From positions 79,670,001 to 79,734,000 of the forward strand of contig CM060731.1 of assembly GCA_030704615.1 (NCBI GenBank): DNA of 64,000 bases, read 5' to 3'. Numbering within the stretch: the first letter of the stretch is position 1; every line of letters starts with the position of its first letter. The DNA comes from Takakia lepidozioides (lineage: Eukaryota > Plantae > Bryophyta). Below, piece by piece: positions 21,974-64,000 of the stretch. The position numbers were made by a program, and so were the translations under genes. Under the pieces are notes generated by a model that saw only the letters and a list, made by a program, of their open reading frames with translations, searched no databases and had not been told where the DNA came from.

Positions 21974-22019
21974 TTATTACTTTACTTATTATAAAGGGGA
22001 GTAGAGGCCCTGTTACTTA

Positions 22020-25730: not shown

Positions 25731-26451
25731 CCAAGAGAGCGCGCTCAGTGGCCGCGCAGACAGACATTCCTGTCGATGCAGACAGAGATCCATCAGAGCA
25801 GGGCTGGGCAGGGCACGACAGGGCGCACGAGGGGTTTGTCAGCTGTGGAATGCAGAATGCAGCAGGCTGTCTTTACTGATGAGTGCGTGCGGGGAAAGGG
25901 GCAAGAAGCGAATGAAGGGGAGTCGTGTGCCAATGCAACTTTCTTGTTGACAGAATGAAAGAAGGCGGGAGAATTTCTTTGTATGTTCACCATCTTGTTT
26001 TGGAAGCCAGTGGCCCTCTAACAGTTTCGGGCCGCCAGACTCACCAGCGTTGTCATTTCCGTGGCGTTCTGGTCGAGACGCAGTATTCACTAGTCGTAAA
26101 GTTCAGTACTGTGATGGCATACTGTAATTAGAGTCTTTGTCTCTCGAAAGTAAGGACTGCGGATCTTTTGTTTTGATATTGGTTGGTGAAGAAGGTTTTA
26201 GTATGGACGGTAAGGTTCAAGCTCACCAAAATTTGAAGTTTTCGGTTGTAGATCTGGCTTGTTCGTCCTGGCGTAATAGTTGAGGACAACGACGAAGGGA
26301 CCAGTCATTGTTAGACAGTACGTAGCAGAGGTTATAAGCACGGTAGCATAAATCCTAAGCTGTCTCAATTTCTGAAATTTCCAAAATTTCATGTTACCAA
26401 TTGGTGTTGCTTGCAAAAGGGTGAGAAAGAAGGAGAGAGATCGACGTATTG

Positions 26452-29400: not shown

Positions 29401-32400
29401 CATGAGCATTTAAAGTACACATGCAAGTGCTCCTTTTTGGAGATCTACAATGAGCAGATCATTGACCTACTAGAGCCATTTTCTACCAACTTGCAGGTAT
29501 TTACACCACCGTGATGTTGAAGTTGCTCATGATGGATTGCTCATTCTGAGTTTCGGGTGTGGAATGTGAGAAATCCCAGTACTTTCATAAACCCAAAAGC
29601 CTTTGTAAACCAAGAAATACCGACCCAGACTGGTCATCAAGCAGACAACTGTAGTGCAGCTAAACATTGACGAGTGGCCAGGCTAACCACCTTCTAAGGA
29701 AAACCTGCCACACTAGGAGGATACAAGGGGCAGACGCCATGCAGCACAAGTCCTTATCTGGGGATTTCTGTGGACAATTTAAAGTAACGTTTCTTTCTCT
29801 TCTCCTTTGTCCCATGGGTGTACACTCTTTGTTCTGTGACTGGTGCTGGTACATCTCTTGCCAAATTGGGGACTAGAACTAGAGCACCGCTGCTGATCTA
29901 CGCATTGAGCTTTCCAGGATGATGTCTATACTAGCTGGTACATGCAAAACGAAATTGGCATTTGCTATGTGCAAGCATTATGGTATTTTTATGCTGAGTT
30001 TCTCTAGCCCTATATTTGTTTGGAACAATCTGTTTGAGGGCATGCCATAGCCACCATTTGGCAGGAATGGTCACTGGTATATACTGCCACTCTTTTGTGG
30101 ATGTTTTAAGCTTTTTGTCTTATGTGTTTGGCAACTGCAAGCAAAGTGGGGTAGAAGTATATGTATTGTCGAGTACACTAATGGGATTTTCTGATAAGTT
30201 GATTATTTGAGAGCCTATTGATTGTATTTATCCTTTGGCTCCCTGTCAAACAGATGCGCGAGGATATGAAAAAGGGAGTGTATGTCGAAAATCTCTCCGA
30301 GGTTGAGGTGCAATGTGTTCAAGATGTTGTCCATCTCCTCCTCCTGGTAATATTTCACCATCTGTGTTATGAAATGTACTACAGTTCATGCAGCGGTGAG
30401 AGTTAATGTGGAAGAATAATTCTCTAATTATTAGGTTTCTTGGAGGCATGTTGTGCAGTGATATTTGAAAGGAAGGAAAAGTATTTTAGAATGTCAATGG
30501 TAAGCTCAAAGAGCTTATGGGACAAAAGAAAGAATGATCCAAGAAAGACTGGGGCACTCAATAAGCAACCTGAAAACAACTATAAAACCAGGGATTCTCT
30601 AAGGTGGGAGTGCCTCAAGAAATGAAATGGTACTTTTATAACATTGGCGGGAAGCGCAAATAGCTTGTGGGACAAGATGAAGAAAGAAACAAGAAAGAGG
30701 AAGGGCTGCAAACAGACCAAAAGCACTAAAGCTCAAGGAATTGTGTAAGAGTCAAGGCTTCATGCAGGTAAGCTACCAAGCATTTCTGATCCTTGTAATG
30801 GAAGACCTCCATGAGAGATTGGGTATCCCGGAATAGACAATTGAAACTCCCATGGATCTCGTAGTATAGAGGGCAGTGAAAGAAGGAATGTTCTTCACTT
30901 TCAATTTCTCAGTAGTTTATGCAAGCGGGGCATAGTCTATCTTCATGTTGCATAATTTCCCACCTAGACTGTTGGAGCCCATTCTGAACCTCCCCAATGC
31001 CCTTAGAAATGAAATGAAATGAAATGGTACTTTATAACATCCAGGGAAGCTGAAACAGCTGAGGGGGAAGGAAAGTAGAGAACAACAGAAGTGGGATACC
31101 AACAACCAGCCCCCACAACCAGAACACTACAGTTCCAATTGAAGAGATTCTCTAAGGTGGAGAGTCTGTTGTAGCTATGTTGCAAGGCATCTCTGGTCCT
31201 TGGAACACCTCTATTAGGGATTAGTATCTCTAAATAAGCAAAGATAGTGGCCCTGGATTTTGTAACTGAGAGGACGGTGAAAAAAGGAAAGTTCTTGAGT
31301 CTTATTCTCCAGCCTGTCTTGTCTAACAAGTTGGTCGGCACACCACAGCTTCTGCCATGTGCCAGTCTCTATCTACAGGCTTTGTGAGCCCACCCTGAAT
31401 CAACCCAATGCCTGTAGAGACAGGGAGACAGAGGTGGGCTGTAAGATTCCATCCGGCAGAGGATGAGTAAGGTTCCAGGTCCAGTGGAGGGAAGTCCCTT
31501 CAGCTCTTGCCCAATGAGTCTGTTCCTGCTGATTTCAAGACGTTCTGGAAAGACATGAAATGAAATGAAATGAAATGGTACTTCATAACGTCTGCGGAAA
31601 GCTCAAAGAGCTTACGGGACAAACTGGAAAAACATGAGAGGAAACAAAACCAGAGCCAAAAAAAAGCCCAAAAGCAACTACTGCTGAAGGGGATGTCTAA
31701 GGGTCAGGGCCTGGTGCAGGTAAGCTGCCAAGCATTTTTGATCCTCATAGTGGAAGACTTCAGTGTGAGTTCCACAGAATAGACACAGGAATCTCCAACA
31801 AATCTCATAATATAGAGGGCAATAAAAGAAGAAATGAAATGAAATGAAATGGTACTTGAGTTCCATAAGCAGAACACTTAATTTGTTGGGCACTTATGTG
31901 AAATCCCATGTTCCTTACACACAATTGGCAGCATTGAGGGAGGAGCTCAAGCAAGAGTTTGAGGCAAGAATTGCCACTGAGTGTGCGAAGAAGGTGGATG
32001 TGGAGGCTAACCATAGGTTGCAGAAAGAGTTGGAGGACACTCAATCTGCTCTACAGCTTGCAAAGGGAAACCTGATTGAAGCAGGTCTGGAGCAGGAGAA
32101 GTTACATGAAGTGCACAAGCAGCAGTTCTGTGGAAAGCTCTAAGAGCTTATGGGACAAGAGGAAGCAATAAACAAGAAATGAAATGAAATGAAATGAAAT
32201 GGTGCTTTATATCGTCTGCGGAAAGCTCATAGAGCTTATGGGACAAAATGGAAGAAAACATGAGAGAGGAAACAAAACCAGAGCCAAAAATAAAAACTGT
32301 TGCTCGAGAAAGAAAGGAAATGAAATGGTACCGCACACCATTTGTGGGAAGCTCAAAGAGCTTGAGGGCCCCCAAGCAACTAAAGCTCAAGTGATTGTCT

Positions 32401-35400
32401 AAGAGTCAATGCTTCATGCAGGTAAGCTGCCAAGCATTCCTGATCCTCGTAATGGCAGAGAGAGGGTGTTAGAAGTCAGCTCAGATTTAGTTAGCTAGGG
32501 TTCTGTTAGGGTTTTTTGACGGCTAGGGATAGTTCTACCAGAAGGTACCAGCCACCAGAGGTTACTAGAGAACTCACGTAGGATTTAAGGGAAAGGCTGA
32601 GGCAATGCCCAGCACTTCTTCTAGCATTTTGGATGTGCTATCCTAGTAGATTGCAGAGAGAGGAGGAGGAGAAGTCCAGCATCTACTTTTGTAAGTTCTT
32701 TTCTTTTGCAGTAAGGAGCATTCTTAGCATTCTTGTTAGGACTGACACTTCTTGTTAGTACTAACTCTTTGGTTGGTTTAGGCGTCAGTTTTTGTACTGC
32801 TGCTTGTGCTAGAAGCTATCTGTCAATATCTCTAGGAGGTAGAGGACAGGTCTAGTTTCCAACATAGGGGACCTCCACAAGCAGCCCAAAAGCAACTATT
32901 GCTCAAGGGATTGTCTAAGAGTCAAAGCCTCATGCAGGTAAGCTGTCAAGCATTTCTGATCCTCGTATGAAAGACCTCTGTGAGATATTGGATTTCACGG
33001 AAAAGACAATTGAATCTTTCATGGATCTCAGAGTAGAAAGGACAGTGAAAGAAGAAATGTTCTTCACTTTCGATTTCCCTGGTATTCCCAGTGCAAGCTA
33101 AACTATTAGGTGGTCTTCAGGAGGCAGGTTGTCCCACCTAGCCTGTGGGGCCCACACTGAACCTCTTCAATGCCCTTAGAAGAGAGGGAGATAGAGCTGC
33201 AGACAGGAAATGACATGGTACTTTATGACGTCCATCGGAAGCTCAAAGAGCAGAAATGAAATGAAGTGGTACTTTATAATGTCATAAGCTCACAGAGCAG
33301 AGAGAGGGGCCACAAAAGAAGGAGTTGAAGGAACCCAAAATAAGAACTGTGTCAGACTTGGTTAGTCCATGCTCCTGGATGCGGGTCTGCTTTCAAGGAC
33401 ATCCAGTCTTCAAAGGATGAGCAGTCTTTGAAGTGAAGAAAGTATCTCCCTCTGCTGTTTTTGTATACTAGCAAGACATGGAGGTGTTATGAGGCTGCAT
33501 CTCATGGACCTAGAGCATACTAAACTATGGGAATATAGGGTGTGGTAAGGAGAGTGTCATCTTACATGTTTCTGCATGGAGTCTCAGGGGGCTTCCAACA
33601 GGAGAGTGGCCACCACCAATATGAACTGCGAGAGCAGTCGTGCACATAGTGTGTTTACTTGCATCATCGAAAGCAAGGTTTACTTTCCTCTCCAGGCAAC
33701 ATCATCTAAGTTTCATCTTTCCTTGCCATGTCATTAGTTTCCATTCAGTCTCTTACTGTTTAAGAGCATGTCATCACAATTTGTCTGAGAGATTCTTAGA
33801 AATGGATAAACTGTGCCTCTTATTCTCTAAATCTTCTTATTCTACGTGCAGTGGGAACGTGATTCTATGATGAACACTCGATTTGGACGATTGAATCTAG
33901 TGGATCTCGCAGGATCCGAAAGGTGTACCAATGATCATCCTTCTCCTTGTGATTACGTCCATTATAGATACTGTTTGTCACTGACTAGAATGTATTCATA
34001 AGATGTTTGCCGTAGCCTTTTGTGTCACTGACTAGAGTGGGAACATAGAAGGGGTCGACATGAATACACATGACGATCCTAACTGCTATGTTGGATGCTC
34101 AAAGCGGACAGGCAGAAGGCCTCAGGTGCTGAAGGCGAGCGATTGAAAGAAGCTGCCAACATCAACAAATCTCTTTCAACTCTTGGGTAATTCCAAACTT
34201 AGTAATGATACACACTATATACGGAGGACAGAAATATTATAGACAAAGGAATAAAGGGATCAAGAAAGAATGGAAATGAAATAAGAACTAGAAATGGTCC
34301 TTTATAACGTCTGCGGGAAGCTCAAGGAGCTCATGGGACGAGAGGAAGGAAATGAAACGAAATGAAATGATACTTTATAACGTCCGCAGAAAGCTCAAAG
34401 AGCTTATGGGACAAGGAAGAAAACAAAAATAAAGAGAGACCTGACAGTAGTTTTGACCGCAAATCTTACAGTAGAGAGGACAGTGAAAGAAGATTATTCA
34501 CTGTCAATCTCCCGTCTGTCATCTCTATCGTAAGTAGTGGCACAAGTGGCACGCTACATGTTGTCCATCTACCAATCTCTATCTGCAATCTTTGAAAAGA
34601 TAGTAGTACCTCCCACGTATGTCATAATATACAGGACAGGAAAAGAAGTGGTGCGCTGTATCCACTTCCTCGAATGTGCATACTGTGTAGATTGGAACGT
34701 CCTGTGTTTTATCTCAAGACCATTTCCCCGTGTCAATCAGCAACCTATGAGAGCCATCTCGGAAGACACCGAGGGTCGCATGAGGACTGGGTATGATTAT
34801 CCGACTATCCCTGATTTCGAAAAAGATGTCCCTGTAGTATCTGAGACTGGTGGTGAGTTGTCTGGGCCCATGTTTTTTGCACGTAAACCTTGTTGAGATC
34901 TTCTCGAATCAGCCTGTTGCTCTCATTCTTCATAAGTATGACCTCTGGTGGTGGGTTGAAAGGAGGGAGGTAGTGGCATTGAGATTGTAGTGTGCGAGGG
35001 ATTTTCTCAGGTGGTAGTACCACCAGCATTTTGATTCCTTTCTCAGATAAATGTTGAGTTGTGGACAGTGGCCTCGCCGGAAGCCAGTCCTCCAGATCCA
35101 AAGAAGGAAGATGATACTCCTCATACTTGAGAGCTTCAGTGTCAAATTCAGCATCCAGCTTTGCCCTTTACCCCTCCATGAGTCCTGATGAATTCTTCCA
35201 AGGTGTCCATGTTGTGTCCAAAGAGCATAGGTGAGAGTGGGCATCCTTGTTTGACTCTGCTGTCACTTTACACCTCCTCTGAAGCCGTCAGCTGTCATAA
35301 CGTCATAACTCTCCCAACAATACTCACATAATATTTGGATAGCCAAGAGGATGTCAGATGGGACTTCAAGCTTCTTTAATGTCTGCCAAAAGGAAGCCCT

Positions 35401-38400
35401 AGGGATTTAATCAAAAGCTTTTGGGAAGTCCACCAGATGAACAGAAATGAAATGAAATGGTACTTAATAGTGTCTGTGGGAAGCTCAAAGAGCTTATGGG
35501 ACAAGAGGAAATGAAATGAAAAGAAGGAACTTTATAATGTCCGCAGAAAGCTCGAAGAGCTTATGTGACAAAAGGAAAGCAAGAAACAACAAAGAATAAA
35601 AAACAGAGTGAAGCCAGAAGCAGCCCAAAAGCAACTACTGCTCAAGGGATTGCCTAAGGGTCAAAGCTTCGTGCAGATAATCTGATCCTCAGGAAGAAAT
35701 AACAAGAAAGAGAGGGGCCACAAATAGCCCAAAAGCAACTAAAGCTCAAGGGATTGTCTTAAGGGTCAACTCTTCATGCAGGTAAGTTGCCAAGCTTTCT
35801 GATCCTTGGAATAAACGACTTCCATGAGAGATTGGGTATCCTGAATTAGCCAGTTGAATCTCCCATGGATCTCGAATATTAAAAAGCAGGAAAGAATTTT
35901 TATATCGTCCATGGAGGGAGAGGTTAGAACAAACCAACTACTTCAGGATACATCAAATGTTGCTTAAGATAGAGTGCCTCAAGCAGGAATTGAAACCTGA
36001 AGACTTCCGCTCAAGATTGGGAATCTCTGAGGTTCCTCATTTATACTAAGGTGTTGGTCTTGTTTGAAAACGAGGAGGTTGTGCACCAACTCTGTGGGTT
36101 TGTACCTGTAGGTTGGTGATCATGATCCTGGTGGATGTAGCCAATGGTAAACAGCGTCATGTGCCATACCGTGATTCAAAGCTCACCTTTCTTCTCCAGG
36201 TTTGTCTTTGTGCCAAGGCCAGTTTTCCTTGCTGACTCTAGCAACCACTTGTAGTTGTCACATCAGTCATGTTTTGTTGTATTGAACTCACTCAGCAGAA
36301 GATTGTGGTATAAAACTCTCCAGGATTCTTTATATTGATGTCCAACATTTTCCCACCTTTTCTTTGGAAATATTTGAAATAACGAGGAAAATTGGATCTG
36401 TTGGGGCAGGATTCCCTTGGAGGCAATTCGAAGACAACTATAATTGCGAATATTAGTCCTTCCAGCTGGTAATGAAGCGAATCATTATGTCATCCACTGT
36501 CATTAAACTTTGGCTTAGGGATTGTGCGTCCTATTGGGTTAGTAGCTACATTGCTGGATATACATCTGGTCATGTCTTACAGACAATTATTCTCAGTGAT
36601 ATTCTCTGTTCAATGTAAATATTATGTTTAACCACTTGGAGGCATTTGTTGGCAGCTCTTCAATGGAGACACTTAGTACACTCAAGTTTGCTCAGCGTGC
36701 CAAGTTTATCCATAACAATGTATGCTCTCCTTACCATTCTACACATCATGGTTCTTTCTGAAGAAATTCAGTTGCCGTTAATTGGACTGCGTCTATAACA
36801 GCTATGCTTGCTTAGTGGTGGAAGAGTTTCTGACGTTCTTATTTATGTACAGGCTGTTGTCAATGAAGACACATCCGGAGATGTTAGTAGCTTGCGTCAG
36901 CAAATTGAACAGTTGAAGGTGTGGAGAATATTACTAACTGATTTGTGTGTGGTCCTCCATCTCGTCCTCTTTCTATGGATTTCTTCACTTGTAATCCAAA
37001 TATCCCGTTGAGCAGGTCCCTTTTTGTATCATTGCACTTGGGTCCTCTCTGCTGCACAAACACCCTCTCCTGACAATGTTTTCCCCAACATTGATAGGAG
37101 GAGTTGGCTCGTATTCGAAGACAAAGCATATCAAGGATACCATCAGTGCGATCAACGGGAATTTTGCATGAAAGCATACCGGAAGGGGAGCATGGCTATG
37201 GTATGACTACTTCAGCTACTGGGCTTCAACCAGCATTCCAGTCATCAGACTTACTGGAGTGTAATAAGGCTCCTGCTATCTCCCAAATCTTTCATAAGGT
37301 GTGTCCACTTTCCTGCAGTTTTAATCTCCTTTAGTGTGATAATGTTCCATATCCTCATTAGAAACACTGGTAAACATTTCAACTAAAAGTCCCTGAGGTC
37401 TGAAGTAGTGAATATGGTTGCTGGCACATATGCATCAATTGAGTGAAAATTTCAGTCATGTGTCTTGTGTACCTATCTGCCGTTGATGACCAATGATTGC
37501 TTGGAACATGCAAGCAGATACAAAAATTGGAGGCTATGTTGGCAGGAGCTCTCAGAAGAGAGCAGGCAGCCAACCTTTCCACACAGCATTTGGCTGCTGA
37601 GATTGAGCAACTGAATTGCTTGGTGGGTATCCTCTTCATTACAGTCTGTCATGCTTAGATCTAGAGCCAACGGGCACCCGCAAGCAAATTCCACGAGTTG
37701 ACTCATGCTTCTGTCTTGGTTTGTCATACTGTAGATCTTTCTTTGAAGCAGAGTGCTTGCTTGGCCTGGACACTTCTATTGCACCTCTTTTCATCAAAAT
37801 TCCTTCACTATGTTTTTGACCAGAAGGACAATTTAATGTGTTTCATGGAGGCAAGGCATAGGTTGGAAACACCAAAGTGGAGGGTGAAAAAGGAGAAGCA
37901 TTATGGGTCAAGTTGGATGAAGCTCTAAGTCTTACTGTGCAGGTGAAGCAGCGGGAAGATGATACTCAGTGCAGCAAGATGATGCTGCGTTTCAGGGAAG
38001 ACAAAATCCAGAGACTTGAGTTGCTTTCGAAAGGTCTTCTGCCTGCAGACACTTTTCTTATGGAAGAAAAAAATGCTGTACAGGCGGAATTACAGCTAGT
38101 GCAAGTGCGAACAGAGCACAACCCTGAGCTGACACGGTTTGCCATGGAAAACATACGTCTGTCAGAGGAACTTCGCAGGTCCCCAACAATATCACACTGA
38201 CAAGTTTGGATAATTGGAAGCTAGCCTACTTGTGCAAACCCAGTTAGCAATGATTTTGTACATGTGATTATTATGGAGATCTTTTTCTTAGATGCCTTCA
38301 AGGTGAGTGAATGTTGTTGCATAACTGATCATATCCTGCAAAGCAAAAAGAATGAGACAAGTATTGGGGCACTGTTTGCAATACAGGTACCAGGACTTTT

Positions 38401-50400: not shown

Positions 50401-53400
50401 TACGGCAAACAACGTCTTATGAGTACAATCTTTAATTGTGGTTTCTGGACTTGTTCCTCTCTCATGTTTCCATTTTGTCCCATAAGCTCTATGAGCTTTC
50501 CGCGGACGTTATAAAGTACCATTTCATTTCATTTCATTTCATTCTTTATGCTTGGCAGCTTACCTGCAGAAGGCCTTCACCCTTAGACAATCACTAGAAC
50601 ATTAGTTCTTATTCTTGGGTTCTGGTTTTGTTTCCTCTCATGTTTTTCTTCCATTTTGTCCCATAAGCTCTATGAGCTTTCCGCGGATGTTATAAAGCAC
50701 CGTTTCATTTCATTTCCATTGTGTCCCATAAGCTCTATGAGCTTTCTGCGGACATTATAAAGCACCATTTCATTTCATTTCATTCTTTCTTGTTTCTTGA
50801 AAATAAAGAACAGTTCTTCTTTTATTGCCCTCTGTATTAGGAGATCCGTGGGAGATTCCACTTTCTATCTGTGGAACTCAATCTCTCACTGAAGTGGCCA
50901 CAAGGCTACGGCAAACAACGTCTTATGAGTACATTCTCTCACTGAAGTCTTCCATTATGAGGATCAGAATTGCTTGGCAGCTTACCTACACGAGGCCTTG
51001 ACCCTTAGGCAATCCCTTGAGCAGTAGTTGCTTTTGGGCTGCTTGTGGGGGTCCCCTCTCTCTGCCATTACGAGGATCAGAAATGCTTGGCAGCTTACAT
51101 TATAATGTTCGCTTAAATTCATTTCATTTCCCATTTCATTTACATGGTTGGATAGAAATTTAACTAGTCCGCTTAGAGTTTAAGTAGTTGGGTCAGGAAG
51201 AAATTAGCACTTGGAGGGAATGAATTTTTATTGTGAGATCCAATGGATCAAATACCTTCCAAGTGCATACACCTATGTTCCAGTAACCAGGGGATCCTTA
51301 TCTTTGCAGGTTGCAGAGCTGAGTAAGACCCATGCTGAAGAGAAGCAGGAGGAAGCAAACATTCTTGGAAGATCTGTGGAAGAGTTGGAGAGTACAGTTT
51401 ATGCTCTGGAGAGCCAAGTATGTTAGTAAACTGCTGTGATGTGTCTTTTCATATGGTTCTTGTTGCTGCATTTTGTCCTGTTTTGTTTCCTCTCTCTTGT
51501 TTTTTCCATTTTGTCCCATAAGCTCTTTGAGCTTTCCGCGGACGCTATAAAGTACCATTTCATTTCATTTTATTTCCCATTTGTGCCTTCTGCAGATGTT
51601 ACAAAGTCTCATTTATTTCTTTCTTTTTCCTCTCATGTTTTCTTCCATTTTGTCCCATAAGCTCTATGAGCTTTCCGCGGACGTTATAAAGTACCATTTC
51701 ATTTCATTTCATTTTTCCTGTGGAGATCAAATATCTCTCTAGATCTCTTCTTCCTCCCACCTTAAAGAATCTCTTGATTTTGAGTTATTTTTGTTTGTTG
51801 ATGTTGTAAAGTACTATTTCTTTTCATTTTGTCACATAAGCTCTTCGAGCTTCTCATTAGAAAGGGTCTTCGCTATTCCTTTCATTTCTTCTCTTGTTTG
51901 TAAGTTTTTTTGCTTGCTTGCTTGCCCTCTCTGCCCATCCCTCAGTTATGAAGGCCAGACATGCTTTGCAGTGTACATCCATGAGGTACATCTGCAGAGT
52001 TTGCTATTATTATTTGCATTGGTCCAGTTCAGGAGCCTACCAAGTATATCACAGAGCTTTAGTATTTGAAAGGTTTTTGGTTTTTTGAATTTCTTTTGGA
52101 ACTTCGTTTCTAAAGCTTAATATTTTTGTTTGCCTCCTGGTTTTGGGGCAGCTGGGAATTCTGAAAAGGGAGACAGACAGGCATCGACTAATGCGAGAGG
52201 ATATGGAGATGGAGCTGCAAGGATTGAAGAATCATATGTCTATAATGCAAGCAGCACTTGACGAAGCTGGAGCCCGTAGTGCTATGGAACTACGGGAGGC
52301 ACAGTCTGCCAGGGAAGAATTGGAAAGGTTGGAGAAACCGTCATTTCTCCTGACATTTGTGTTTTCTTTTGGTAGGACTCTTGTAGCTCATGCTTCATTA
52401 CATGAGCGGTAGGCTTTAGTTCTTTGGTCCTTACAGTCATGTGTGCATGGCAAATAAATGCATGCAAGGTGGTCATGTGGTCTGTCACTTGTGTATGTTT
52501 GAATATATGCACTGTTTTCCAAATGTATATTCCCATAATTGTGTAGGAGACTAGAGGAGAAGGACGCCGAACTGTTACACGTCCACAGGAAGCTGGAGAA
52601 TCTTCAGATAGACTCTCAAGAAAAAGAGGCACAGGTCTGCTTTCACCCTGTCAAATGTCTACCAATTTGTGTCTAAGCAGGATGAGATCCACTTGAGTCC
52701 CAAGTTAACAGCCTGGTCCAAAGCGCACGTTATACCATAAAGTATATCTGTGGACAAACTGCAACTAGAGACCAGTGCATCTAGATTGTACTCATAAGAC
52801 GTCGTTTGCCGTAGCCTTGTGGCCATTGACCCCGCGCCCAGTTTGAGCGGGAACAAAAGGGACAGAACCTACCTCTGTCAGGGGCTGACGTTGGTAGTAA
52901 GACTTACCTCCATATAAAGAATTAATCCGGGTTTTCCAGATATCCTCTAGAAATCCCTTCACACAAGCATCAATCTGCTGTGTGTGATTTACGCAAAAAC
53001 TAGGCCTCAGGAGGGCCTGGGCTTTTGGCTCAGCCTTGAGACTTTCAAAGTTGGTAAACAGGGGTACAGGCACAATTCCCTTAATAGATTTGAAGAGAGC
53101 GTCTCTTTGGTGAGAGAACCCCGGACAGTGTATCAGAAAATGAATACTGTCTTCAGATTGCCCACACAACGGGGAATTGCACTCTCCCTTTCCTCTCTGC
53201 TTCTGTTTGCTGTTCAAAGGTAGGCTTCCTGCCCTGAGTTTAAATTTCAGTCTAGTGCCGAGAGTGGGTAGACCCTTGAGGTCATCCAAGATGTCCTCCC
53301 CCATGTCACAGACTGGAAACAAGTTCAGGGAAGTTTTCTGCCTAACTTCATTTTCATCAGACAATCTCATGGCAACAGACATGGCTTTGGACACTACAGC

Positions 53401-56400
53401 CTCTAAGTCAGATTTATCCAGCAGGGTCAAGACTTGCGGATCCAGGTCCAGGTCCTTGAAGATCTCTTCTACTCTCTTCTGCCAGGACTTAGCCTGTTTG
53501 ACAGGGCGGTCCTGTTTCCAAGATATAGAGTCGATTAACTTAGGATATCTGGTGTTGGGCATATGTTGCAGCTGACCCCACCATCTGACCTTGAATTCAT
53601 CTCGTCGGGAGCTTAAGGACGGAATGCCAAACTCACCCCGAACAGCCACATTGGCTGTTTTGGAGCATGCTGACATACCAGTGCATCTAGAGTGGGAATG
53701 CATGTGATCAGCTTGATCTACAGGTCCTGCTTTCAAACAAGCAGTTATACACTTTTCGGTGCTTGTACTCAGATTAAAATATCCAAGGCACATGTTTCGG
53801 ACCTCCAAATCGCCACAGAAAGGCAGGCAGCCGAATACCAGCTGAAGGTATATTTTCTTTCCCAGTGGAAACAACAAGCTTTTCTCCTTTTCCCTTGAGC
53901 TTTATTGCTTTTGGGCTGTTTGTGGCCCCTCTCGCTTGGCAGCTTACCTGCACGAGGCCTTGAATCTTAGAGAATCCCTTGAGCAGTAGTCGCTTTTGGG
54001 CTGGTTTTTGGCTCTGGTTTTGTTTCCTCTCTCAGCCGAGATCCACAGCAACATTGGAGTCAAACAGGGCTGCCCCCTTTCACCTACCCTGTTCGGGATC
54101 TACATTGACGCCTTGGAGAATTACATATCAAAAAACCATGGGGTTGGGGTCCCGTTGGATGGGGGACCAACCCAATCAGATCTCCTCTATGCTGATGATG
54201 TTGCCCTTTTGGCACAATCCCCGGTCTTTCTGCAACGCCATCTCAAAATTTTGGAACAGTTCTGCAAAGACTATGGGATGCAGGTCAATCTTAGTAAGAC
54301 CAAGATCATGGTCTTCAATGGCCAGGCTGATCGTAGATTCATCTTCAACCAGCAGGAAATTGAGATTGTGAAATCATACCGGTACCTAGGTCTGGTTATC
54401 CACTCCCCCAAGTTTCACTTTGCAGCCACTGCCTTGGACAGGTTGACTAAAGGTAAGGCGGCCTCCGTCCGCCTTCAGGCCAAATGCAAGCAAATACATC
54501 TGCGGCATCCCCCGACCAAAAAGTGGCTGTTTGACACCGTCGTCAGCCCTGCTACCATCTATGGTTGTGAGTTCTGGGCACCTGGTGTCCCTGTCTCCTG
54601 GTGGGAAAAGAATTTGGAACCATTACAGTCATCTTTTCTCCAAGCAATGCTTGGCGCCAGGAGCACAACTCCATCTCAGATCCTAGGTGCAGAGTTCGCA
54701 TGTGTACCATTGCAATCCGAGGCCCTCTTCAGGCTTACAATCTTTCTCCATAGATTGCAGGCCCTTCCACCCAAAGGGCTAGTGGCAAGGGCCCTCACAA
54801 CATCTATGAGGCTCAAAGCTGCAGGTTTCAGGAACTCCTGGTATGCTCGAGTGGACAGTTTATTTCAACGTAACGGACTTTCTACTGCTTTCCTATTACC
54901 AATGAACCCAGATGAGGTGGACATCACATCCAGACATGACCGCAACAGACTCATTCGGAGAGAGCTTATGGAATTACATGTCAAGAGAACTTGGATGCTA
55001 CCCAATCTCACAACAAAGCTCCACTTCTATCGAGAGACATTCTTGGTGCTCCGCGATGATAGAATCTTGAGACCAAATTACCTTTCAGCACCCTTATCTC
55101 CTTCCCTCTTGAGGGCATTGGGGCGGTTCAGGGTGGGTTCCCACAACCTACGGATAGAGACTGGCAGATGGGAAAACCTGCGACGGGAGGACCGCCTATG
55201 TCCAGCTTGCATAGGGCGCAGCAAGGAAATTGAAACTGAAGAACACTTCTTCTACTGCCCTCTATACTACGAGATCCGTGGGAGATTTCACTGTTTATTC
55301 AGTGGAACCCAAACTCTCACTGATGTCTTCCACTATGAGGATCAAAAATGCGTGGCAGCCTACCTACACGAGGCCTTCACCCTTAGACAATCGCTAGAAC
55401 ATTAATTGTGGTTTCTGGATTTGTTCCTCTCTCATGTTTTCTTCCATTTTGTCCCATAAGCTCTACGAGCTTTCCGCGGACGTTATAAAGCACCATTTCA
55501 TTTCATTTCTTCTTTTTCCATTTTTTCCCATAAGCTCTTTGAGCTTTCCGCGGACGTTATAAAGTACCATTTCATTTCATTTCATTTCTCTTGCTTTTCG
55601 TTCTTCCTCTTGGTCCATAAGCTCTTTGAGCTTCCCATGGTCGGTATAAATTACTATTTCATTCTTCCTCTCACCCTCGCACACACACGTTATTGACATG
55701 AGCTGTAGGTAAATTTGCCTTTCAATGTTGCTAATCACAACATAGTATTCCTCTATCTTGCATGTGGCGAAGTCGCCCACTGCATAGGTGATGTCTTACC
55801 CAAACATGTCTTTCTTGTAGTTCCTTTCTGTAACCATTACTGGCAATGCTTGATCTGTACAGGTTTGCTTGTCTAATAGACAGAATTGTGGTACTTCACC
55901 TGAAAAGATCATACTCACCACCAATTGAAGGTTCAACCAAGGTCTCAATTGATGTGCATGGTGTCCTGTCCTAAGCCTCTAAAAACACTGCAAGTTAAGT
56001 TGGAAGAGCATAAGTCCCACCTCCATCTACCAACAACTCCAAAAGGAGGTGAAACAAGTGCAGCCAAAGTCAAAGGCACAGGGTCGCCATTTAAATGCAT
56101 TGGAATGCGGCTGCCCCACCAGAACCATTCTGAACTGGATGATGAGCGGTTTCCTTATGAGGGTCGTATTGAGGAACTTGAAGCCCTCCTAGGGTCCCGG
56201 CAGAAGGAGGTATCAGTCATCCGTACCACTCCCCCCATCTCCCTATTAAAGATTCATTGCTTGGTCGTCCAATCTCTGTGGGCCTTCTGCAGACAATTAA
56301 GTCACCTCGTTTTGTTGTCATGCATTGTTGTTCCACTCTGGGTTTTCCATGGAAGATCTATATTTGTTTGCAGCTCTGTCTGCCTCTATTATAAGGGCAT

Positions 56401-59400
56401 TGGGAAGGGTGGGCTCCCACAGTCTGCCTAAAAGTTTGGTAGGTGGGACAACCTGCAGCGTGATGACCGCCTTTACCCTTGTTGCGCTAGGGTTACAGGA
56501 GGGAAATTGAAAATGAAGATCATTTCTGCTCTCACTGTCCTTTCTACTTTGAGATCTGGGGGAGATACTACTATTGTCTATCCCGAGATGGCCTATCTCT
56601 GACAGAGACGTTCCATTATGGGGATCAGAAATGCTTGGCAGCATATCTGCACGATGCGTTGACTCTTAGCTGTCTAACCGGGCTACATGGGATTGCATGT
56701 AGGTTTTTATGCTGAACACAAGATTGGCTGAAGCTGAGAGCATGACACGTGATGTCGTATGCGATCTGCTTGGTGTGAAAATGGACATCAATAACGTTGT
56801 GGTATGTCTGCCTTTCCATGTATGAGGCTCAAAGCTGCAGGTTTCAGGAACTCCTGGTATGCTCGAGTGGACAGTTTATTTCAACGTAACGGACTTTCTA
56901 CTGCTTTCCTCTTACCAATGAATCCAGATGAGGTGGACATCACATCCAGACATGACCGCAACAGACTCATTAGGAGAGGGCTTATGGAATTACATGTCAA
57001 GAGAACTTGGAAGCTACCCAATCTCACGACAAAGCTCCACTTCTATCGAGAGACATTCTTGGTGCTCCGCGATGATAGAATCTTGAGACCAAATTACCTT
57101 TCAGCATCCTTATCTCCTTCCCTCCTGAGGGCATTGGGGCGGTTCAGGGTGGGTTCCCACAACCTACGGATAGAGACTGGCAGATGGGAAAACCTGCAAC
57201 AGGAGGACCGCCTATGTCCAGCTTGCATAGGGCGCAGCAAGGCAATTGAAACTGAAGAACACTTCTTCTTCTACTGCCCTCTGTACTACGAAATCCGTGG
57301 GAGATTCCACTGTTTATTCAGTGGAACCCAAACTCTCACTGATGTCTTCCACTATGAGGATCAAAAATGCTTGGCAGCCTACCTGCACGAGGCCTTCACC
57401 CTTAGACAATCGCTAGAACATTAATTGTGGTTTCTGGATTTGTTCCTCTCTCATGTTTTCTTCCGTTTTGTCCCATAAGCTCTATGAGCTTCCCGCGGAC
57501 GTTATAAAGCACCATTTCATTTCATTTCAATTCATGTACAGACTGAGTAAATGTGAATGTGCTTTCTAGCTCTTAATAATTTCCTCTTCTGGTGTATGCA
57601 GTCTATCTTGGGCCAAGAGCAGGTGGAGCAGCTTGCTCACCACAGAAACGAAGCAGCACGAGAGAAGGTGTTTTTCAACCCAATCCACTTACAAAGCATT
57701 TCCTATGTTTCTAGTGTCACATTAAGGGGTAATACTGTTTCATGTTGTGCTATCTATCTTTTGAGTTGAAGTGCCAACAGGGCTCTGTTTGGAAAGCACA
57801 TCTATTTCAGCAATCACAGGCCAAAGCTTAGCCTCACTGCTACTCATAGCTTCAAACCTTGTTAAACTCCAAACTGCTTCTCTTCAAACTTCCCAGGATA
57901 AGTACCTACTGGAAAGAAGTAACAGCTTGAAAATTCCCTAACTAGAGTGTTCCTGTTTGCAGGAAGCAGAGTTGTTGACGTCGAGATCACAGCTCAATGA
58001 TTTTATTGAGGAAAGAGAAAGGTAGAGAGCAAGAATGTTAGCAGATCTCTCTCCTCTCTTGTTTCCTCTCTGGTTTTCTGGAGCACTAGACTGGATTTTA
58101 TCGTGAATGTCCATGACAACTGGTGTCCATCGCATGGGCAGCTGGCTACGGGAAATCACCCGAATGCAAGCCGAGATCTTAGCTGCGGGTGTTACTGCTG
58201 AAAGGCTACAGGAGCGTGACCAGACACTCACAACAGAAAATGGAAAGATCAAGGTGTTGCCTTTACACGTTTTTCTTCATCTATGTCAGCCCAGTTGTGT
58301 GTTTCTTGTCTGTCCCTGTCTCCTTATTTGGATCTCTCTTGGAATGTCACTCGTCTATTGTTTTCATGCGTGTGCGTGTAGCAGCCCCCCACACAAGTGA
58401 CATAGGCTGGTTGGTCTGCAGGCTGAAAGCATCAGTCAACAGAAACAGATAGGAGAGCTGGAACGAGAGGTTAAGAAGCTCTCTGGACAACAAAACCTCC
58501 AGCAGCGGATTCATCATCATGCCAAAATTAGAGTATTTGACCACTTCCTTGGACAACCATGCCAAACTAGATAGAATATAAAATGAGATCAGTCTCATTG
58601 GCCTCTCCTTTTGTCATACCTCTTTCTTGTTCCGTTACTTTCTGTGATCTTCAAGTGGCATAATCTAAAATTCTTTGTTGTTGTGGTGACAGGAGGAAAA
58701 CAACTCACTTAGAATACAGAATGATGAACTCTGTGGTAAGCTACGTCATGCTGAGCTCCTATTTGTGCGGCTGAATGATGAGCTGGCACGCTACCAGGCA
58801 GCAGGCGGCAAAGCCCCGTTCCTGAACATTGACGAGGAGCAGCGACTTCGCAACAAGCTTGAGGTTGCATAACACTGTACAAATATGCTTGTATTGTAGC
58901 TGGTGTCTTGCATTCGGACATTTTATCTATTTTTTTCTACATGAGCATTATTCTTCACATATGAGAGGCAGTGGCAATTAGTTTGCTGTTACTTATCACA
59001 CAACTCATCATGGAATCTTGCTCGACTGAAATGAGGCAGCTGTTCTCTGCTGGTAAGGTAATGTACTTAATGATTTCAAGAGAAAACAAGTACAAATCCG
59101 TTTGAAAGAAAGAGAAATAATCCCCCCATGCATTTCTTGACTTTTTTCCATCTTACAGGAGACAGAGGACAACAGGATTCAGATGGCTCAAAAGCTCATA
59201 AACTTGTGCTGTAGCATTATGAAGGTAAACCCATATCTCTGCTTCTGAACTGTGTTTCTTGCCTCAAAATCCAGAAGTCTGGAAATTTCTTCCAAACACG
59301 ACTGCAAGTTTTCTTACTAGGCAGGAGCTGATGGAATTCCATGTAGGATGGACCTGGAAATTAGGGAACCCCATTATCACAAAGCTGCAGTTCTATTGTG

Positions 59401-61231
59401 ACATCCTCCTCAACAATATAATCTTATAGCCCAATTACTTGTTTGCACTCCACCTCTTCTAAGGTGCAACATGGGCTCCAATAGACTCACCATTAATGGG
59501 ATATCGCAATGTGGCAAACACTAGTGCCCTGCTTGTGCTAGAGAAGACAGGGAGACTTTTAGACTGAGAAGCATTTCTTCTTCCACTGTGATATTCCGGG
59601 CCACTACTGCTGCCTAATCAGTGACAGCCAATCCCTCACAGAGGTCTTTCATCATTACGAGGATAAAAAATGCCAGCATATTACATGATGCCCTCCATTG
59701 TAGAGGATCTCTTGATGTTCACTAGGTTTTGGGCTGCTTATTGAGGGCCAACCCTGTTTCTTGTTTCATCCTCTCCCATAAGCTCTTTGAGCTTTCCACG
59801 GTCGTTATAATGTGTCATTTCATGCCTTCACCCTTAGACAATCACTCGAACAATAGTTCTTATTCTTGGCTTTGGTTTTATTTTCTCTCTCATGTTTTCT
59901 TCCATTTTGTCCCATAAGCTCTATGAGCTTTCCGCGGACGTTATAAAGCATCATTTCATTAGGGTGGGTTCTCAGTCTGCAGGTAGAGACTGGTAGGTCA
60001 GACAAGCTGCAGTGCGCTGACCACTTGTGTGGGGCTTGTGCTAGAGATGACAGGAGTGAGATTGAAATTGAAGAACATTTCTTCTTTCCCAGTACTTTCT
60101 ACTCTGAGTCCTGGGGGAGATCCCGGATCCGCTGCTTATTGCAGACCTTGGTGTTCTTGTCTCCTACCTTCCTTTATCCCATGAGCTCTTTGAGCTTTCC
60201 GTGGACGTGACTAGTACCATTTCATTTCATTTCTTTGGTGCTTTTTTGTTGTTTGTTCTTTGTTGGAGTTGGCCTCTTCAATGAATTGTGTCCATACAGA
60301 GCAGCTAACTTTTCCATTGTCAATAGATAGCAGGAATTTCAGAGTCAGGAACGGACACAGACCCATCGATGGCAATGGAAGCACTTCAGCAGTTGGCAGA
60401 TCGCCTCCAAACCACAGAACAAGAATTATCAAATTTCAAACTCAAGGTACACGTTGTGCAGGCAAAGGCACTTGTCACAGTTGATGTCAGGAAACACAAC
60501 TGCGTGGCCTTGTTAAGTATTAGAAATATGTGTGTCTCTGTCAGAAGACTCTGTAGTTTTCTCCCGGTTTTACTCTCAATGACACTTCTGTCCATCGGCT
60601 GTGCATAGCGCTGTAAATCGCTGGACGTCAAAATATCTTTCTTGTGGGCTCCCAGTCTGCGGAGAGACTCGTAGGTGGGAAAATTTGCAACGTGACGACC
60701 ACCTATGCCCCATTTTCCCTGGGAACCGCAGGGAAATCGAAAGTGAAGAATTTCACTGCCTTTTATACTATGAGATCCGTGGAAGATTCAACTGTCTATT
60801 CCGGGATACCCAATCTCTCACGGAGGTCTTCCATTACCAGGATCAGAAATGCTTGGCAACTTGAAGGCTGACTCTTAGACAACCGCTTGGGCTATAGTTG
60901 CTTTTGGGCTGCTTGTGGCCCCCCCTTCTTGTTTCTTCCTTCCTCGTCCCATAAGCTCTTTGAGCTTCCCGTGAACGTTATGAAGTACCATTTCCTTTCT
61001 CTCTTCCTCCTCTTACCTTGTGCCTAAAGTGCCATTCTTGTTTACTGTATAAGGACTCTCAAATATCTTCTCCGTTTTCCTGCATTCACCATTGTTCTCT
61101 CACTGGGGCAGACAAGGATTGCAGCAGAGAAGAGGCGGCTAGGTGAGCTCCGTGCTGTACACTCACAATGCAAGCCTACCAACTTCACAGCCCTCCAGAG
61201 ATCTGCCAGCCCTGGCCCCGCACCCCGATAG
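26452..61231 (+). CDS. Kinesin-12, phragmoplast-orienting kinesin (POK1/POK2, KIN12C/D)-like; ~35 exons
   Basis: Motor exons include [25 protein letters not shown]|TGSGKT (28459-28578), [10 protein letters not shown] (29383-29496), 30254-30346, NCESSRAH (33588-33677), LVDLAGSER (33852-33922), [10 protein letters not shown] (34112-34186), [14 protein letters not shown] (36112-36199), DSLGGNSKT and TLKFAQRAK. The kinesin-12 neck carries GALRRE and [14 protein letters not shown]. Giant coiled-coil exons lie at 42536-44122 and 45440-48151. The POK C-terminus has [18 protein letters not shown] and [17 protein letters not shown]. Last exon 61112-61231 (TAG). The acceptor near 55976 (AAG) is uncertain. 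Confidence 0.92.
30620..33350 (-). mobile_element. Nested array of family-A LINE 3' fragments, antisense, in kinesin intron 30347-33587
   Basis: About 8 tails reading GAAATGAAATGGTACTTTATAACGTC..GGAAAGCTCAAAGAGCTTATGGGACAA, with attached C-terminal coding pieces (rc: [20 protein letters not shown]). Confidence 0.88.
32467..32864. mobile_element. Solo LTR (398 bp) nested in a family-A fragment
   Basis: TGTTAG...CCAACA ends; TSD GAGGG (32462-32466) / TAGGG (32865-32869). The empty-site sequence is present at 51035-51080 (rc), which confirms the boundaries. Confidence 0.8.
34290..35880 (-). mobile_element. Family-A 3' fragments flanking a decayed RTE-like RT fragment (~34900-35440), antisense, in kinesin intron 34187-36111
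   Basis: Tails at ~34291, 34349, 35444 and 35508. The rc translation gives KAFD..(frameshift) and [13 protein letters not shown] (~35220-35257). Confidence 0.8.
38983..39430 (-). mobile_element. Family-A LINE 3' fragment (~390 bp), the last antisense copy
   Basis: rc: [59 protein letters not shown], then 3' UTR and (CATTT)n tail. Confidence 0.88.
48703..50428 (+). mobile_element. Family-B non-LTR retrotransposon, 5'-truncated, with an internal RT deletion
   Basis: [37 protein letters not shown]-terminal [18 protein letters not shown]. One in-frame TGA at 49430. 11-bp TSD TCTTTAATTGT (48692-48702 / 50429-50439). Confidence 0.92.
50896..50934 (+). mobile_element. 39-nt family-B 3'-end insertion
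   Basis: GGCCACAAGGCTACGGCAAACAACGTCTTATGAGTACAT flanked by the 14-bp TSD TCTCTCACTGAAGT (50882-50895 / 50935-50948). Confidence 0.85.
52786..53676 (-). mobile_element. Family-B LINE 3' fragment (891 bp), antisense
   Basis: Near-identical reverse complement of ~49538-50428. 15-bp TSD ACCAGTGCATCTAGA (52771-52785 / 53677-53691). Confidence 0.93.
54034..55590 (+). mobile_element. Longest family-A LINE copy (5'-truncated within RT, open to the stop), RTE/RTEX-like
   Basis: [24 protein letters not shown], then the C-terminus [37 protein letters not shown]. Stop at 55405, ~90-nt 3' UTR with hairpin, (CATTT)n tail, followed by a second tail unit. Confidence 0.92.
56821..57532 (+). mobile_element. 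Family-A LINE 3' fragment, inserted ~19 nt after a kinesin donor site
   Basis: Near-identical to 54805-55510. Candidate TSD CATGTA (56817-56822 / 57533-57538). Confidence 0.9.
59470..61000 (+). mobile_element. Older family-A fragments, sense, in the last two kinesin introns
   Basis: Tails at ~59775, 59903, 60178 and 60947; coding remnants [24 protein letters not shown]. Confidence 0.82.
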
Positions 61232-63172: not shown

Positions 63173-64000
63173 TATCCAAAAACAGAAATGGTGGTAGGGG
63201 TAGGAGGTTGCATTCGCAACACCTCAACATTATATCCTAAGCACTCACCTAACATCTAGCCCAATGATACCCCAACATCCGGATTGCGTCTAGTCTAATG
63301 AACTCACCTAAAACAGATGCTTGTGGTTGGCCGTCAACAAAAGTGGGGGGAGGGAGGGGTATGCAACAGCCCAATATTGACCCTTAGGCACTAACCTAAC
63401 ATCTAGCTCAATGACATCCCAATATTATAACAGCCCAACATCTAGCCTAATAAACTCATCTGTAATGGATGTTTGTGGCTGACCACCATAGCATGTATAG
63501 AAAGAAACAAAAAATGAGAGGTGGGGAGTGGAGAATCAACATCCCAACACCAACCACATGGATTAACCAAAGACAGGGCAACTATGCCGTGAGGGTATGC
63601 TCACAACAACTGCCTTATTGGTGAATGTACGCGAGTACGCTAAAATGGACTTGATTATGTGGGTGTAGGACTCCCCAGGTAAAAGGAAATGACGCCTATT
63701 TGCAAGGCTTCTCAATGTAGAGTAATAGCGTCTAGAATGCATATAGCTGGTACGCTGATAGTTCGCGCCTTGGTGGGTTGTCAGGTGGAGTAGGCAACAG
63801 CAGTGGCTGTTATAGTTCCTATGACCGATCACGTCATAACTGCTTGGGTCCGGCCGCATAAGCTACTATTGCTGGGCCCAAGACTGCTCATTTTTGCCAC
63901 TTGGCAAACAGTTGTTTGATATTACCCCCAAAAAATGTGATTGGTCATAGGGCTCAAGGTTCATACAAGCATTTGAATTGGTTCAACTTTGAAACCCCAT

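What the first reader, a model, noticed from the sequence alone, without database searches (positions are those of the whole stretch)
30620..61000. Strand-polarised domains of one LINE family inside a single gene, switching across a 54-nt exon
Seen: about 13 family-A 3' ends in three introns (30347-33587, 34187-36111, 38457-39772) are all antisense. About 20 copies in nine introns from 39827 to 61111 are all sense. The only exception I found is one old sense remnant at ~28670-28820. The switch falls exactly across exon 39773-39826 ([18 protein letters not shown]), with an antisense copy ending ~39430 and a sense tail starting ~11 nt after the donor. The kinesin pre-mRNA therefore carries two long complementary domains. 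Inference, candidate causes: (i) selection against nearby inverted pairs creating uniform-orientation domains; (ii) fork-direction-biased insertion with a replication origin or terminus near 39.6 kb; (iii) local cis spreading of copies. Possible consequences are IRAlu-like long-range pairing, back-splicing or exon skipping, and siRNA production. Copies within one intron are not independent, so the intron-level count (3 versus 9) is the fair statistic.
Basis: partly seen in the sequence, partly recalled or inferred. Interest (0 to 1): 0.8.

Follow-up and report, generated by a model that had tools for sequence, protein, structure and literature searches.

The report
Self-stacking LINE chains, orientation fixed per intron
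A very abundant plant jumping gene (a LINE) keeps landing on the tails of its own older copies, so each intron of this kinesin gene holds one orientation; three neighbouring antisense introns beside nine sense ones is within what chance allows.

Summary
A profile search finds 45 family-A units, all between 27.9 and 61.0 kb. Seventeen are on the minus strand at 30480-39408 and 26 on the plus strand at 39838-60999. The switch lies across exon 39773-39826, which is supported by RNA and DNA contigs.

The copies are not independent. Family A is a LINE with a 3' hairpin and a (CATTT)n tail. Sixteen of 45 units start within 25 nt after another unit's tail on the same strand (0.6 expected, P about 2e-19), and none abuts an inverted copy. 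The colonised introns are 15-92% LINE.

Exact runs tests give 5e-12 for units, 0.001-0.005 for stacks, and 0.009, 0.045 or 0.068 for introns. That is unremarkable after a scan of thousands of windows.

LINE-free introns show no change in strand composition at the switch. A 98.4% identical inverted pair of a second LINE sits in the sense block. Neither fits a replication-fork or anti-inverted-pair cause.

The genome-wide orientation test could not be run. Earlier notes of this scan already describe this family's tail-after-tail chains on other DNA.

The parts
26449..27405 (+). First large coding exon of the host kinesin gene. It is Ser-rich at the N-terminus and ends where the motor domain starts.
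   Evidence: ORF. The motor exons that follow match Pfam Kinesin in order.
27914..28057 (-).
   Evidence: nhmmer E = 1.3e-5. The alignment shows the ORF-end motif and the hairpin/core.
28660..28815 (+). Old family-A ORF-end remnant, sense.
   Evidence: nhmmer score 75.9; tblastn E = 2e-7.
30480..31857 (-). Antisense chain of four 5'-truncated A units plus a tail-only fragment, in intron 30347-33587.
   Evidence: Each unit starts a few nt after the previous unit's (CATTT)n tail. The tail-only fragment 31836-31857 is shown.
32127..32459 (-). Antisense chain of three A units, including one young tail unit (32186-32308, 94% identical to the consensus).
32860..33299 (-). Antisense chain of three A units.
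34273..35896 (-). Antisense chain filling most of intron 34187-36111. It includes an RT fragment at 35169-35448.
   Evidence: nhmmer; tblastn.
38666..38948 (-). Old family-B (tail-less LINE) fragment, antisense, next to the A copy.
   Evidence: nhmmer with the B profile; tblastn with the B ORF.
38983..39408 (-). Antisense A copy (model positions 1069-1473), the last one before the switch.
   Evidence: DNA contig X1 39341-39880 joins its 5' end to the exon.
39773..39826 (+). The 54-nt kinesin exon at the switch.
   Evidence: An AG precedes the exon and GT starts the next intron. An RNA contig of depth 8.6 covers 39788 and the flanking intron bin has zero depth.
39838..40007 (+). Two short sense A tail fragments (39838-39886 and 39963-40007). 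The first starts 11 nt after the donor.
44187..44376 (+). Old sense A 3' end, about 35 nt after exon 42482-44152.
48186..48546 (+). Sense chain: a tail-only fragment and three tail units, starting about 25 nt after the donor.
48635..50431 (+). Family-B LINE (RT ORF, tail-less, 3' end ...ACAATCT), sense, sitting between two A chains.
50429..51098 (+). Sense chain of six A units. It contains a 43-nt B 3'-end insertion (50895-50937) with a 14-bp target-site duplication.
51479..51887 (+). Sense chain of three A tail units.
52783..53695 (-). Young antisense family-B copy with an AGATGCACTG(+TCT) target-site duplication. It is 98.4% identical to 49536-50431 in inverted orientation.
53934..55663 (+). 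Sense chain. An older copy (53934-54033 plus 55513-55583) is split by the longest, young A copy (54035-55509, RT to tail), followed by an older tail unit.
56363..56669 (+). Old sense A fragment.
56816..57528 (+). Young sense A copy, 96.8% identical to 54801-55509. It is 5'-truncated, starts about 20 nt after a donor, and has a short CATGTA-type target-site duplication.
59257..60233 (+). Sense chain of four A units.
60644..60999 (+). Old sense A copy, the last one in the gene.

Best explanation
Family A is a highly abundant non-LTR retrotransposon (LINE). It has a short 3' hairpin (AAGCTC-TWT-GAGCTT) and a (CATTT)n tail instead of poly(A).

Inferred mechanism: reverse transcription is primed where the RNA tail can pair with nicked target DNA. 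Sites that look like CATTTC or TTTC on the strand that becomes the element's sense strand are therefore preferred. The best such sites are the tails and TC-rich 3'UTRs of copies already present.

One founder insertion in a small intron therefore seeds a head-to-tail chain. Every later copy, from several subfamilies and ages, inherits the founder's orientation. This is shown by the anatomy.

The orientation blocks then reduce to about 14 founder events in this gene: 4 antisense and 10 sense. The mild sense excess fits T-rich intron sense strands. That three antisense founders sit in consecutive colonised introns is most likely chance (inferred).
For: - Element identity: RVT_1 domain and a C-terminal CX2CX12HX3C motif in the 469-aa ORF. 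A conserved hairpin and (CATTT)n tail appear in 28 aligned tail units.
- Chains: 16 of 45 units start within 25 nt after the tail of another unit on the same strand, against 0.57 expected (P about 2e-19). Twenty-one of 45 have a tail-like motif just upstream. None abuts an inverted unit.
- Nested same-orientation insertion: the young copy 54035-55509 splits an older copy's 3'UTR.
- Target example: the young copy 56816-57528 landed at CTTTC|CATGTA.
- Separate events, not DNA duplication: neighbouring units differ in 5' truncation point, in subfamily markers and in identity to the consensus (0.74-0.99).
- The colonised introns are 15-92% LINE, and 54-92% in ten of the twelve.
- All 45 units lie inside 27.9-61.0 kb. 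There are none in the other 31 kb of the window.
- Summed contig depth over A is about 1000-2000 times the single-copy depth.
- Intron-level exact runs tests give P = 0.009, 0.045 and 0.068, depending on whether the two old 5' remnants are counted.
- LINE-free small introns have the same skew on both sides of the switch.
- The motor-domain exons are collinear on the plus strand across the antisense introns, so an inversion is excluded.
Against: - At stack level (5 antisense and 9-10 sense stacks separated by non-A DNA) the runs test still gives P = 0.001-0.005. The three separate antisense stacks in intron 30347-33587 are not joined by recognisable A sequence, so abutting-tail homing alone does not explain their shared orientation.
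- The leftover, unmasked DNA of the three antisense introns is purine-rich on the plus strand (0.54-0.57), against 0.37-0.47 in eight of the nine sense introns; the ninth has only 48 unmasked bases. I read this as unrecognised old antisense LINE debris, but that is not shown.
- The genome-wide base rate of orientation and of neighbour co-orientation could not be measured.
Confidence: 0.68

Rival explanations
1. A real regional directional bias. The insertion orientation of this LINE would be set by a local directional process, such as replication-fork direction (as reported for human L1) or strand exposure during transcription, and this process would switch near 39.6 kb.
For: - The pattern holds for old and young copies alike.
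- It is still P = 0.001-0.005 at stack level.
- A review states that human L1 shows replicative and transcriptional strand asymmetries (PMC10030826, read).
Against: - LINE-free introns show no skew change across the switch. The apparent skew switch in the raw profile is made by the LINE copies themselves.
- The old copies at 27.9 kb (antisense) and 28.7 kb (sense) break the two-domain picture.
- A young antisense copy of the second LINE (52783-53695) sits inside the sense block.
- By my own recollection the human fork bias is modest, not all-or-none. I did not check that figure here.
Confidence: 0.08
2. Selection shapes the blocks. Insertions that create nearby inverted pairs would be removed because of dsRNA, mis-splicing or recombination, leaving domains of uniform orientation.
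For: No abutting inverted A pairs are present. Both blocks are uniform.
Against: - Inverted A segments lie only about 770 nt apart around the 54-nt exon. Their predicted duplex energy is -86.7 kcal/mol, against -56.9 +/- 5.6 for shuffles.
- An 896-bp, 98.4% identical inverted B pair lies 2.35 kb apart around three predicted exons.
- The gene is expressed and the exon is included in the RNA contig.
- Homing already explains the absence of inverted neighbours.
Confidence: 0.05
3. DNA-level local amplification. Unequal crossing-over, tandem duplication or gene conversion inside the introns would have multiplied a few copies, so the shared orientation is inherited with the DNA.
For: - Short tail units of 65-80 nt repeat in tandem.
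- The same odd 5' junction occurs at about 32470 (antisense) and about 51050 (sense).
Against: - Neighbouring units have different truncation points, subfamily markers and ages.
- Similarity between copies stops at the element ends. For example, 54801-55509 matches 56817-57528 only over LINE sequence.
- The separators between stacks have no repeats elsewhere in the window.
Confidence: 0.1

Closest known systems
Stringent-type LINEs with a conserved 3' stem-loop and short tandem-repeat tails (eel UnaL2, zebrafish L2 elements; PMC1636434, PMC4176376)
   Same: A conserved 3' hairpin is followed by a few copies of a 5-nt repeat instead of poly(A). Copies are 5'-truncated.
   Different: There is no Rfam match to the UnaL2 3' element or to any other family. 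The clade was not determined. The best protein relatives, at only 41% identity, are unnamed RVT_1 proteins; lower hits at 35-40% identity come from a fern, a conifer and a streptophyte alga. The strong chaining onto its own tails is not a described feature of UnaL2.
Self- or repeat-targeting LINEs that build nested, co-oriented clusters (Zepp of Chlorella and Coccomyxa, PMC3446292; microsatellite- and repeat-specific non-LTR lineages, PMC4640811)
   Same: New copies land in or beside earlier copies or simple repeats, which gives clusters of truncated elements.
   Different: Here the clusters sit in introns of an expressed gene, not at centromeres or telomeres. Targeting looks like tail microhomology (CATTTC/TTTC) rather than a strict site. 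The type of endonuclease was not examined.
The TC-targeting, tail-less or TC-tailed LINE families of this same genome, and the (CATTT)n chains noted earlier in this scan (s1-473378, s1-473365, s1-488732, s1-462137)
   Same: Same genome and the same habit: head-to-tail stacks in introns and a landing site that renews itself. Family B of this window behaves like the TCT-targeting tail-less family (target-site duplications start at TCT).
   Different: Those notes stress sense orientation. This locus shows that antisense founders occur too (4 of 14 colonised introns) and grow chains in the same way.
Inverted-repeat Alu pairs (IRAlus) flanking exons (my own knowledge, not checked here)
   Same: Inverted copies of one retroelement lie in the introns on both sides of the exon(s).
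   Different: No back-splice or skipping junction was seen in the RNA contigs. The pairing is only predicted.

Membership tests
Non-LTR retrotransposon (LINE) | Reverse transcriptase domain of the non-LTR type | tested here: met
   Pfam RVT_1, E = 2e-18, in ORF 53996-55405. Homologues are RVT_1 proteins.
Non-LTR retrotransposon (LINE) | Copies share a common 3' end and have variable 5' truncation | tested here: met
   Thirty-four of 45 units reach model positions 1458 or beyond. Their 5' starts range from position 1 to 1425.
Non-LTR retrotransposon (LINE) | Target-site duplications flank insertions | tested here: inconclusive
   Clear for family B (10-14 bp). For family A only a short CATGTA-type duplication was seen at 56816-57528. 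Inside chains the tail repeats hide the duplications.
Stringent-type LINE with 3' stem-loop and repeat tail | Conserved hairpin just upstream of a short tandem-repeat tail | tested here: met
   The hairpin arms and (CATTT)2-5 are conserved in 28 aligned units and the hairpin is predicted in the fold. That the RT recognises it is not testable here.
RTE-X clade (name used in earlier scan notes) | RT phylogeny places the element in the clade; APE endonuclease present | not tested
   No reference set was available. No copy in the window reaches the endonuclease region.
Self-homing / tail-targeting LINE | New copies start at or next to the 3' tail of resident copies, in the same orientation, far above the random expectation | tested here: met
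   Sixteen of 45 observed against 0.57 expected, P about 2e-19, with no inverted abutments.
Orientation domains set by replication direction | A strand-composition or polarity switch, independent of the elements themselves, at the boundary | tested here: not met
   The AT skew of LINE-free introns is -0.12 before the switch and -0.07 after it. Origin maps are not available.
Kinesin (host gene) | Motor-domain exons collinear on one strand across the switch | tested here: met
   Pfam Kinesin profile positions 83-114, 108-152, 152-181, 182-213, 206-240 and 265-292 are hit by exon pieces from 28456 to 36210, all on the plus strand.

The most novel reading that the evidence does not exclude
The contiguous antisense block is not chance. 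Under this reading the orientation of this LINE's founder insertions is set by a regional directional process, such as replication-fork direction or co-transcriptional strand exposure. Orientation switch points inside long plant genes would then mark fixed origins or termini, and LINE fossils could serve as a map of fork polarity.
Probability: 0.07. Interest if true: 0.7.

Novelty: new member of a known kind. Interest (0 to 1): 0.27.

Why it matters
This locus shows how a self-homing LINE fixes orientation one intron at a time. It can inflate small introns into kilobase arrays that are mostly LINE. Any count of copies will then greatly overstate the significance of orientation patterns: here 5e-12 at unit level against 0.01-0.07 at intron level. 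That caution applies to every orientation or "intron-seeking" claim made for this genome.

The locus also gives two concrete places to look for RNA-level effects of inverted intronic repeats in a plant gene:
- the 54-nt exon 39773-39826;
- the three predicted exons between the inverted family-B pair.

Tried and rejected
- **Other loci of the same species.** I wanted to measure neighbour co-orientation genome-wide. A word search with the 469-aa A ORF gave best hits of only 41% identity. The 206-aa ORF gave nothing. An exact scan of metagenome contigs for the 24-nt tail core gave no match. The decisive genome-wide test was therefore not run.
- **Target composition as the cause of the antisense block.** The unmasked remainder of the antisense introns is purine-rich, but LINE-free introns lying between them are not. 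I rejected a domain-wide compositional cause.
- **Inversion or misassembly.** Rejected. The kinesin motor exons are collinear and contigs bridge the switch.
- **Rfam.** No match for the 3' end.
- **Earlier scan notes.** Searches for orientation-switch notes found none.
- **Odd joints in one DNA run.** Contig joints in X2 between about 39040 and about 39860 have sides of only 21-27 nt and fall at the palindromic hairpin. I did not interpret them.
- **Joined kinesin model.** Exons were searched piece by piece, by reference.

Full report
**What is in the window**

The window is from a land plant, according to the earlier scan notes. A kinesin gene lies on the plus strand from about 26.4 kb to beyond 61 kb.
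- Pieces of the motor domain match Pfam Kinesin in collinear order, profile positions 83 to 292, from 28456 to 36210.
- Long coiled-coil exons follow at 42482-44152 and from 45416 to a donor near 48165.
- The gene is transcribed and spliced. RNA contig X5 record 17 joins 37179-37296, 37516-37621 and 37942-38175. A contig of the same depth (8.6) covers 38394-38456 and position 39788 inside the 54-nt exon. The intron bin 39561-39757 has no RNA depth.

I did not build or search a joined protein model. Exons were handled one by one, by reference.

**The repeat families**

Family A is a non-LTR retrotransposon.
- Its longest copy (54035-55509) carries an RVT_1 domain and a C-terminal CX2CX12HX3C motif.
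- The ORF is followed by a 3'UTR of about 110 nt with a six-base-pair hairpin (AAGCTC-TWT-GAGCTT) and a tail of two to five CATTT repeats.
- Rfam has no match.
- The nearest proteins in the large collection are only 41% identical and unnamed. Lower hits at 35-40% identity come from a fern, a conifer and a streptophyte alga.
- Summed contig depth over the A copies is roughly 1000-2000 times the single-copy depth in the DNA runs, so the family is very abundant.

Family B is a second LINE (48635-50431). It has no tail, ends in ...ACAATCT, and makes target-site duplications of 10-14 bp that begin at TCT. This matches the TCT-targeting tail-less family described in earlier notes of this scan.

**Check of the observation**

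Three methods agree.
- The 24-nt tail core, with up to six mismatches, occurs 27 times: nine on the minus strand (30634-39025) and 18 on the plus strand (39844-60985).
- A profile built from the window's copies finds 45 units: minus at 27914-28057, plus at 28660-28815, then 17 minus units (30480-39408), then 26 plus units (39838-60999).
- tblastn with the A ORF gives the same order.

The antisense copy ends at 39408 at its 5' end, and the first sense tail begins 11 nt after the donor of exon 39773-39826.

Short-read contigs from two DNA runs bridge the antisense 5' end, the unique intron DNA, the exon and the sense tail (X1 39341-39880; X2 39404-39880 and 39861-40436). A local misassembly is therefore unlikely, although these runs may come from the sample that gave the assembly.

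Its alignment to the model is convincing. The order of colonised introns is therefore - + - - - followed by nine +.

**The copies are not independent**

- Sixteen of the 45 units start within 25 nt after the tail end of another unit on the same strand. Random placement would give 0.57 (P about 2e-19). Twenty-one have a tail-like motif just upstream, and none abuts an inverted unit.
- The young full-length-most copy 54035-55509 splits an older copy inside its TC-rich 3'UTR, in the same orientation.
- The young copy 56816-57528 landed at CTTTC|CATGTA.

These junctions fit priming of reverse transcription by pairing of the (CAUUU)n RNA tail with tail-like target DNA. That would make resident tails and 3'UTRs the best targets and would force the same orientation. 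The priming step itself is inferred, not shown.

Units in one chain differ in truncation point, subfamily markers (for example CTATGAG plus AAAGCACC in the youngest group) and identity to the consensus, which ranges from 0.74 to 0.99. They are therefore separate insertions over a long time, not DNA duplications. The antisense block also received a young unit (32186-32308).

The colonised introns are 15-92% A or B sequence, and 54-92% in ten of the twelve. All 45 units lie within the gene, with none in the other 31 kb of the window. Earlier first-stage notes on other DNA of this genome describe the same tail-after-tail chains for this (CATTT)n family. What I tested here agrees with them.

**Statistics**

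Exact runs tests:

| Unit of counting | Counts | P |
|---|---|---|
| Units | 17 minus, 26 plus | 5e-12 |
| Stacks (separated by non-A DNA) | 5 minus, 9-10 plus | 0.001-0.005 |
| Introns | 3 against 9 | 0.009 |
| Introns, with the sense remnant at 28.7 kb | 3 against 10 | 0.045 |
| Introns, also with the antisense remnant at 27.9 kb | 4 against 10 | 0.068 |

Homing makes units within a chain dependent, and probably nearby chains too. A P of 0.01-0.07 in one gene, picked by eye from more than 5,000 windows of this genome, is not evidence of a domain-level process.

The stack-level value is the one piece that still leans towards something more. The three antisense stacks in intron 30347-33587 are separated by 269 and 400 bp with no recognisable A sequence.

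**Tests of the proposed causes**

*Composition.* The raw skew profile seems to switch between the blocks, but the T- and C-rich LINE copies themselves cause this. LINE-free small introns have pooled AT skews of -0.06 in the 5' part, -0.12 between the antisense introns, -0.07 just after the switch and -0.16 late in the gene. Nothing independent of the elements changes at 39.6 kb. The unmasked remainder of the three antisense introns is purine-rich on the plus strand. I take this as old antisense debris, but that is unproven.

*Fork direction.* There is no positive evidence. A review records replicative and transcriptional strand asymmetries for human L1 (PMC10030826). That those biases are modest is my own recollection and was not checked. 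The young antisense B copy at 52783-53695, inside the sense block, is one data point against a strict regional rule.

*Selection against inverted pairs.* This is contradicted by two arrangements in this very gene.
- Inverted A segments flank the 54-nt exon about 770 nt apart. Their predicted duplex energy is -86.7 kcal/mol, against -56.9 +/- 5.6 for shuffles.
- An 896-bp, 98.4% identical inverted B pair (49536-50431 and 52783-53678) lies 2.35 kb apart and brackets three predicted exons.

*Inversion.* Excluded by the collinear motor exons.

**Consequences**

The pre-mRNA does carry complementary LINE sequence. For example, 38982-39371 against 55138-55510 is 84.5% identical in inverted orientation over 393 nt, with a predicted duplex of -582 kcal/mol. 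The RNA contigs show ordinary inclusion of the 54-nt exon and no back-splice or skipping junction. Contigs drop rare forms, so this is no proof of absence. Small RNAs and dsRNA could not be examined.

**Comparison with known systems**

- The hairpin plus short-repeat tail resembles stringent-type LINEs such as UnaL2 and the zebrafish L2 elements (PMC1636434, PMC4176376).
- The nesting into its own copies resembles Zepp clusters in trebouxiophyte algae (PMC3446292) and repeat-specific non-LTR lineages (PMC4640811).
- Clade membership, including the RTE-X label used in earlier notes, was not tested.

**Verdict**

Uniform orientation within introns is explained by self-homing chain growth. The arrangement between introns is within chance. 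The replication and selection explanations are unsupported but not excluded.

The decisive genome-wide test could not be run, because no other DNA of this species was reachable with the tools.

Noticed in passing
window 49536-50431 (+) and 52783-53678 (-): A young inverted pair of the tail-less LINE B, 896 bp at 98.4% identity. The two copies lie in two different introns and bracket three predicted kinesin exons (about 51310-51419, 52150-52340 and 52539-52625). This is a stronger candidate for intron pairing or back-splicing than the family-A blocks.
   Followed up: partly
window 39838, 44187, 48186, 51479, 56816: Five of the nine sense-colonised introns have their first A fragment within about 60 nt of the 5' splice site (11 nt at 39838, about 20 nt at 56816). 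This may reflect small original introns, or TTTC-like targets just after donors.
   Followed up: no
window 50880-50948: An extremely 5'-truncated insertion of LINE B, 43 nt long, sits inside an A copy. It has a 14-bp target-site duplication, TCTCTCACTGAAGT.
   Followed up: yes
window about 32430-32470 (-) and 51050-51098 (+): The same odd 5' junction (CCCTCTCTCTG joined to the A ORF end) is present in an antisense and a sense copy 18.6 kb apart. It could be a subfamily with a fixed 5' end or a shared microhomology.
   Followed up: partly
window 31838-32140 (+): A 101-codon open frame with a coiled-coil-like sequence sits in the unique DNA between two antisense A chains. It has no Pfam hit and no similarity elsewhere in the window. 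On the minus strand the segment ends in a 22-nt A tail.
   Followed up: partly
window 37000-42900 (runs X1 and X2): Two DNA runs said to come from one sample carry different letters at many sites. One contig (X1, depth 12.6) lacks 4 nt at 39788, inside the 54-nt exon. This suggests two haplotypes or a contig error.
   Followed up: no
window 8190-8613: Tandem repeat with copies offset by about 108 bp, 80% identical (self-BLAST).
   Followed up: no
window 21736-21974, 62043-62242, 62937-63173: Another short dispersed repeat family, 82-84% identical, with all three copies in direct orientation. They lie outside the region with family-A copies.
   Followed up: no
window 18675-19698 (+) and 23876-24491 (-): Other LINE reverse-transcriptase remnants upstream of the kinesin gene. 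An F-box/LRR-like gene (20-3367, plus strand) and a JmjC-like gene (about 10.8-14.1 kb, minus strand) carry no family-A copies. Both gene names are my reading of the ORF translations and were not tested.
   Followed up: no
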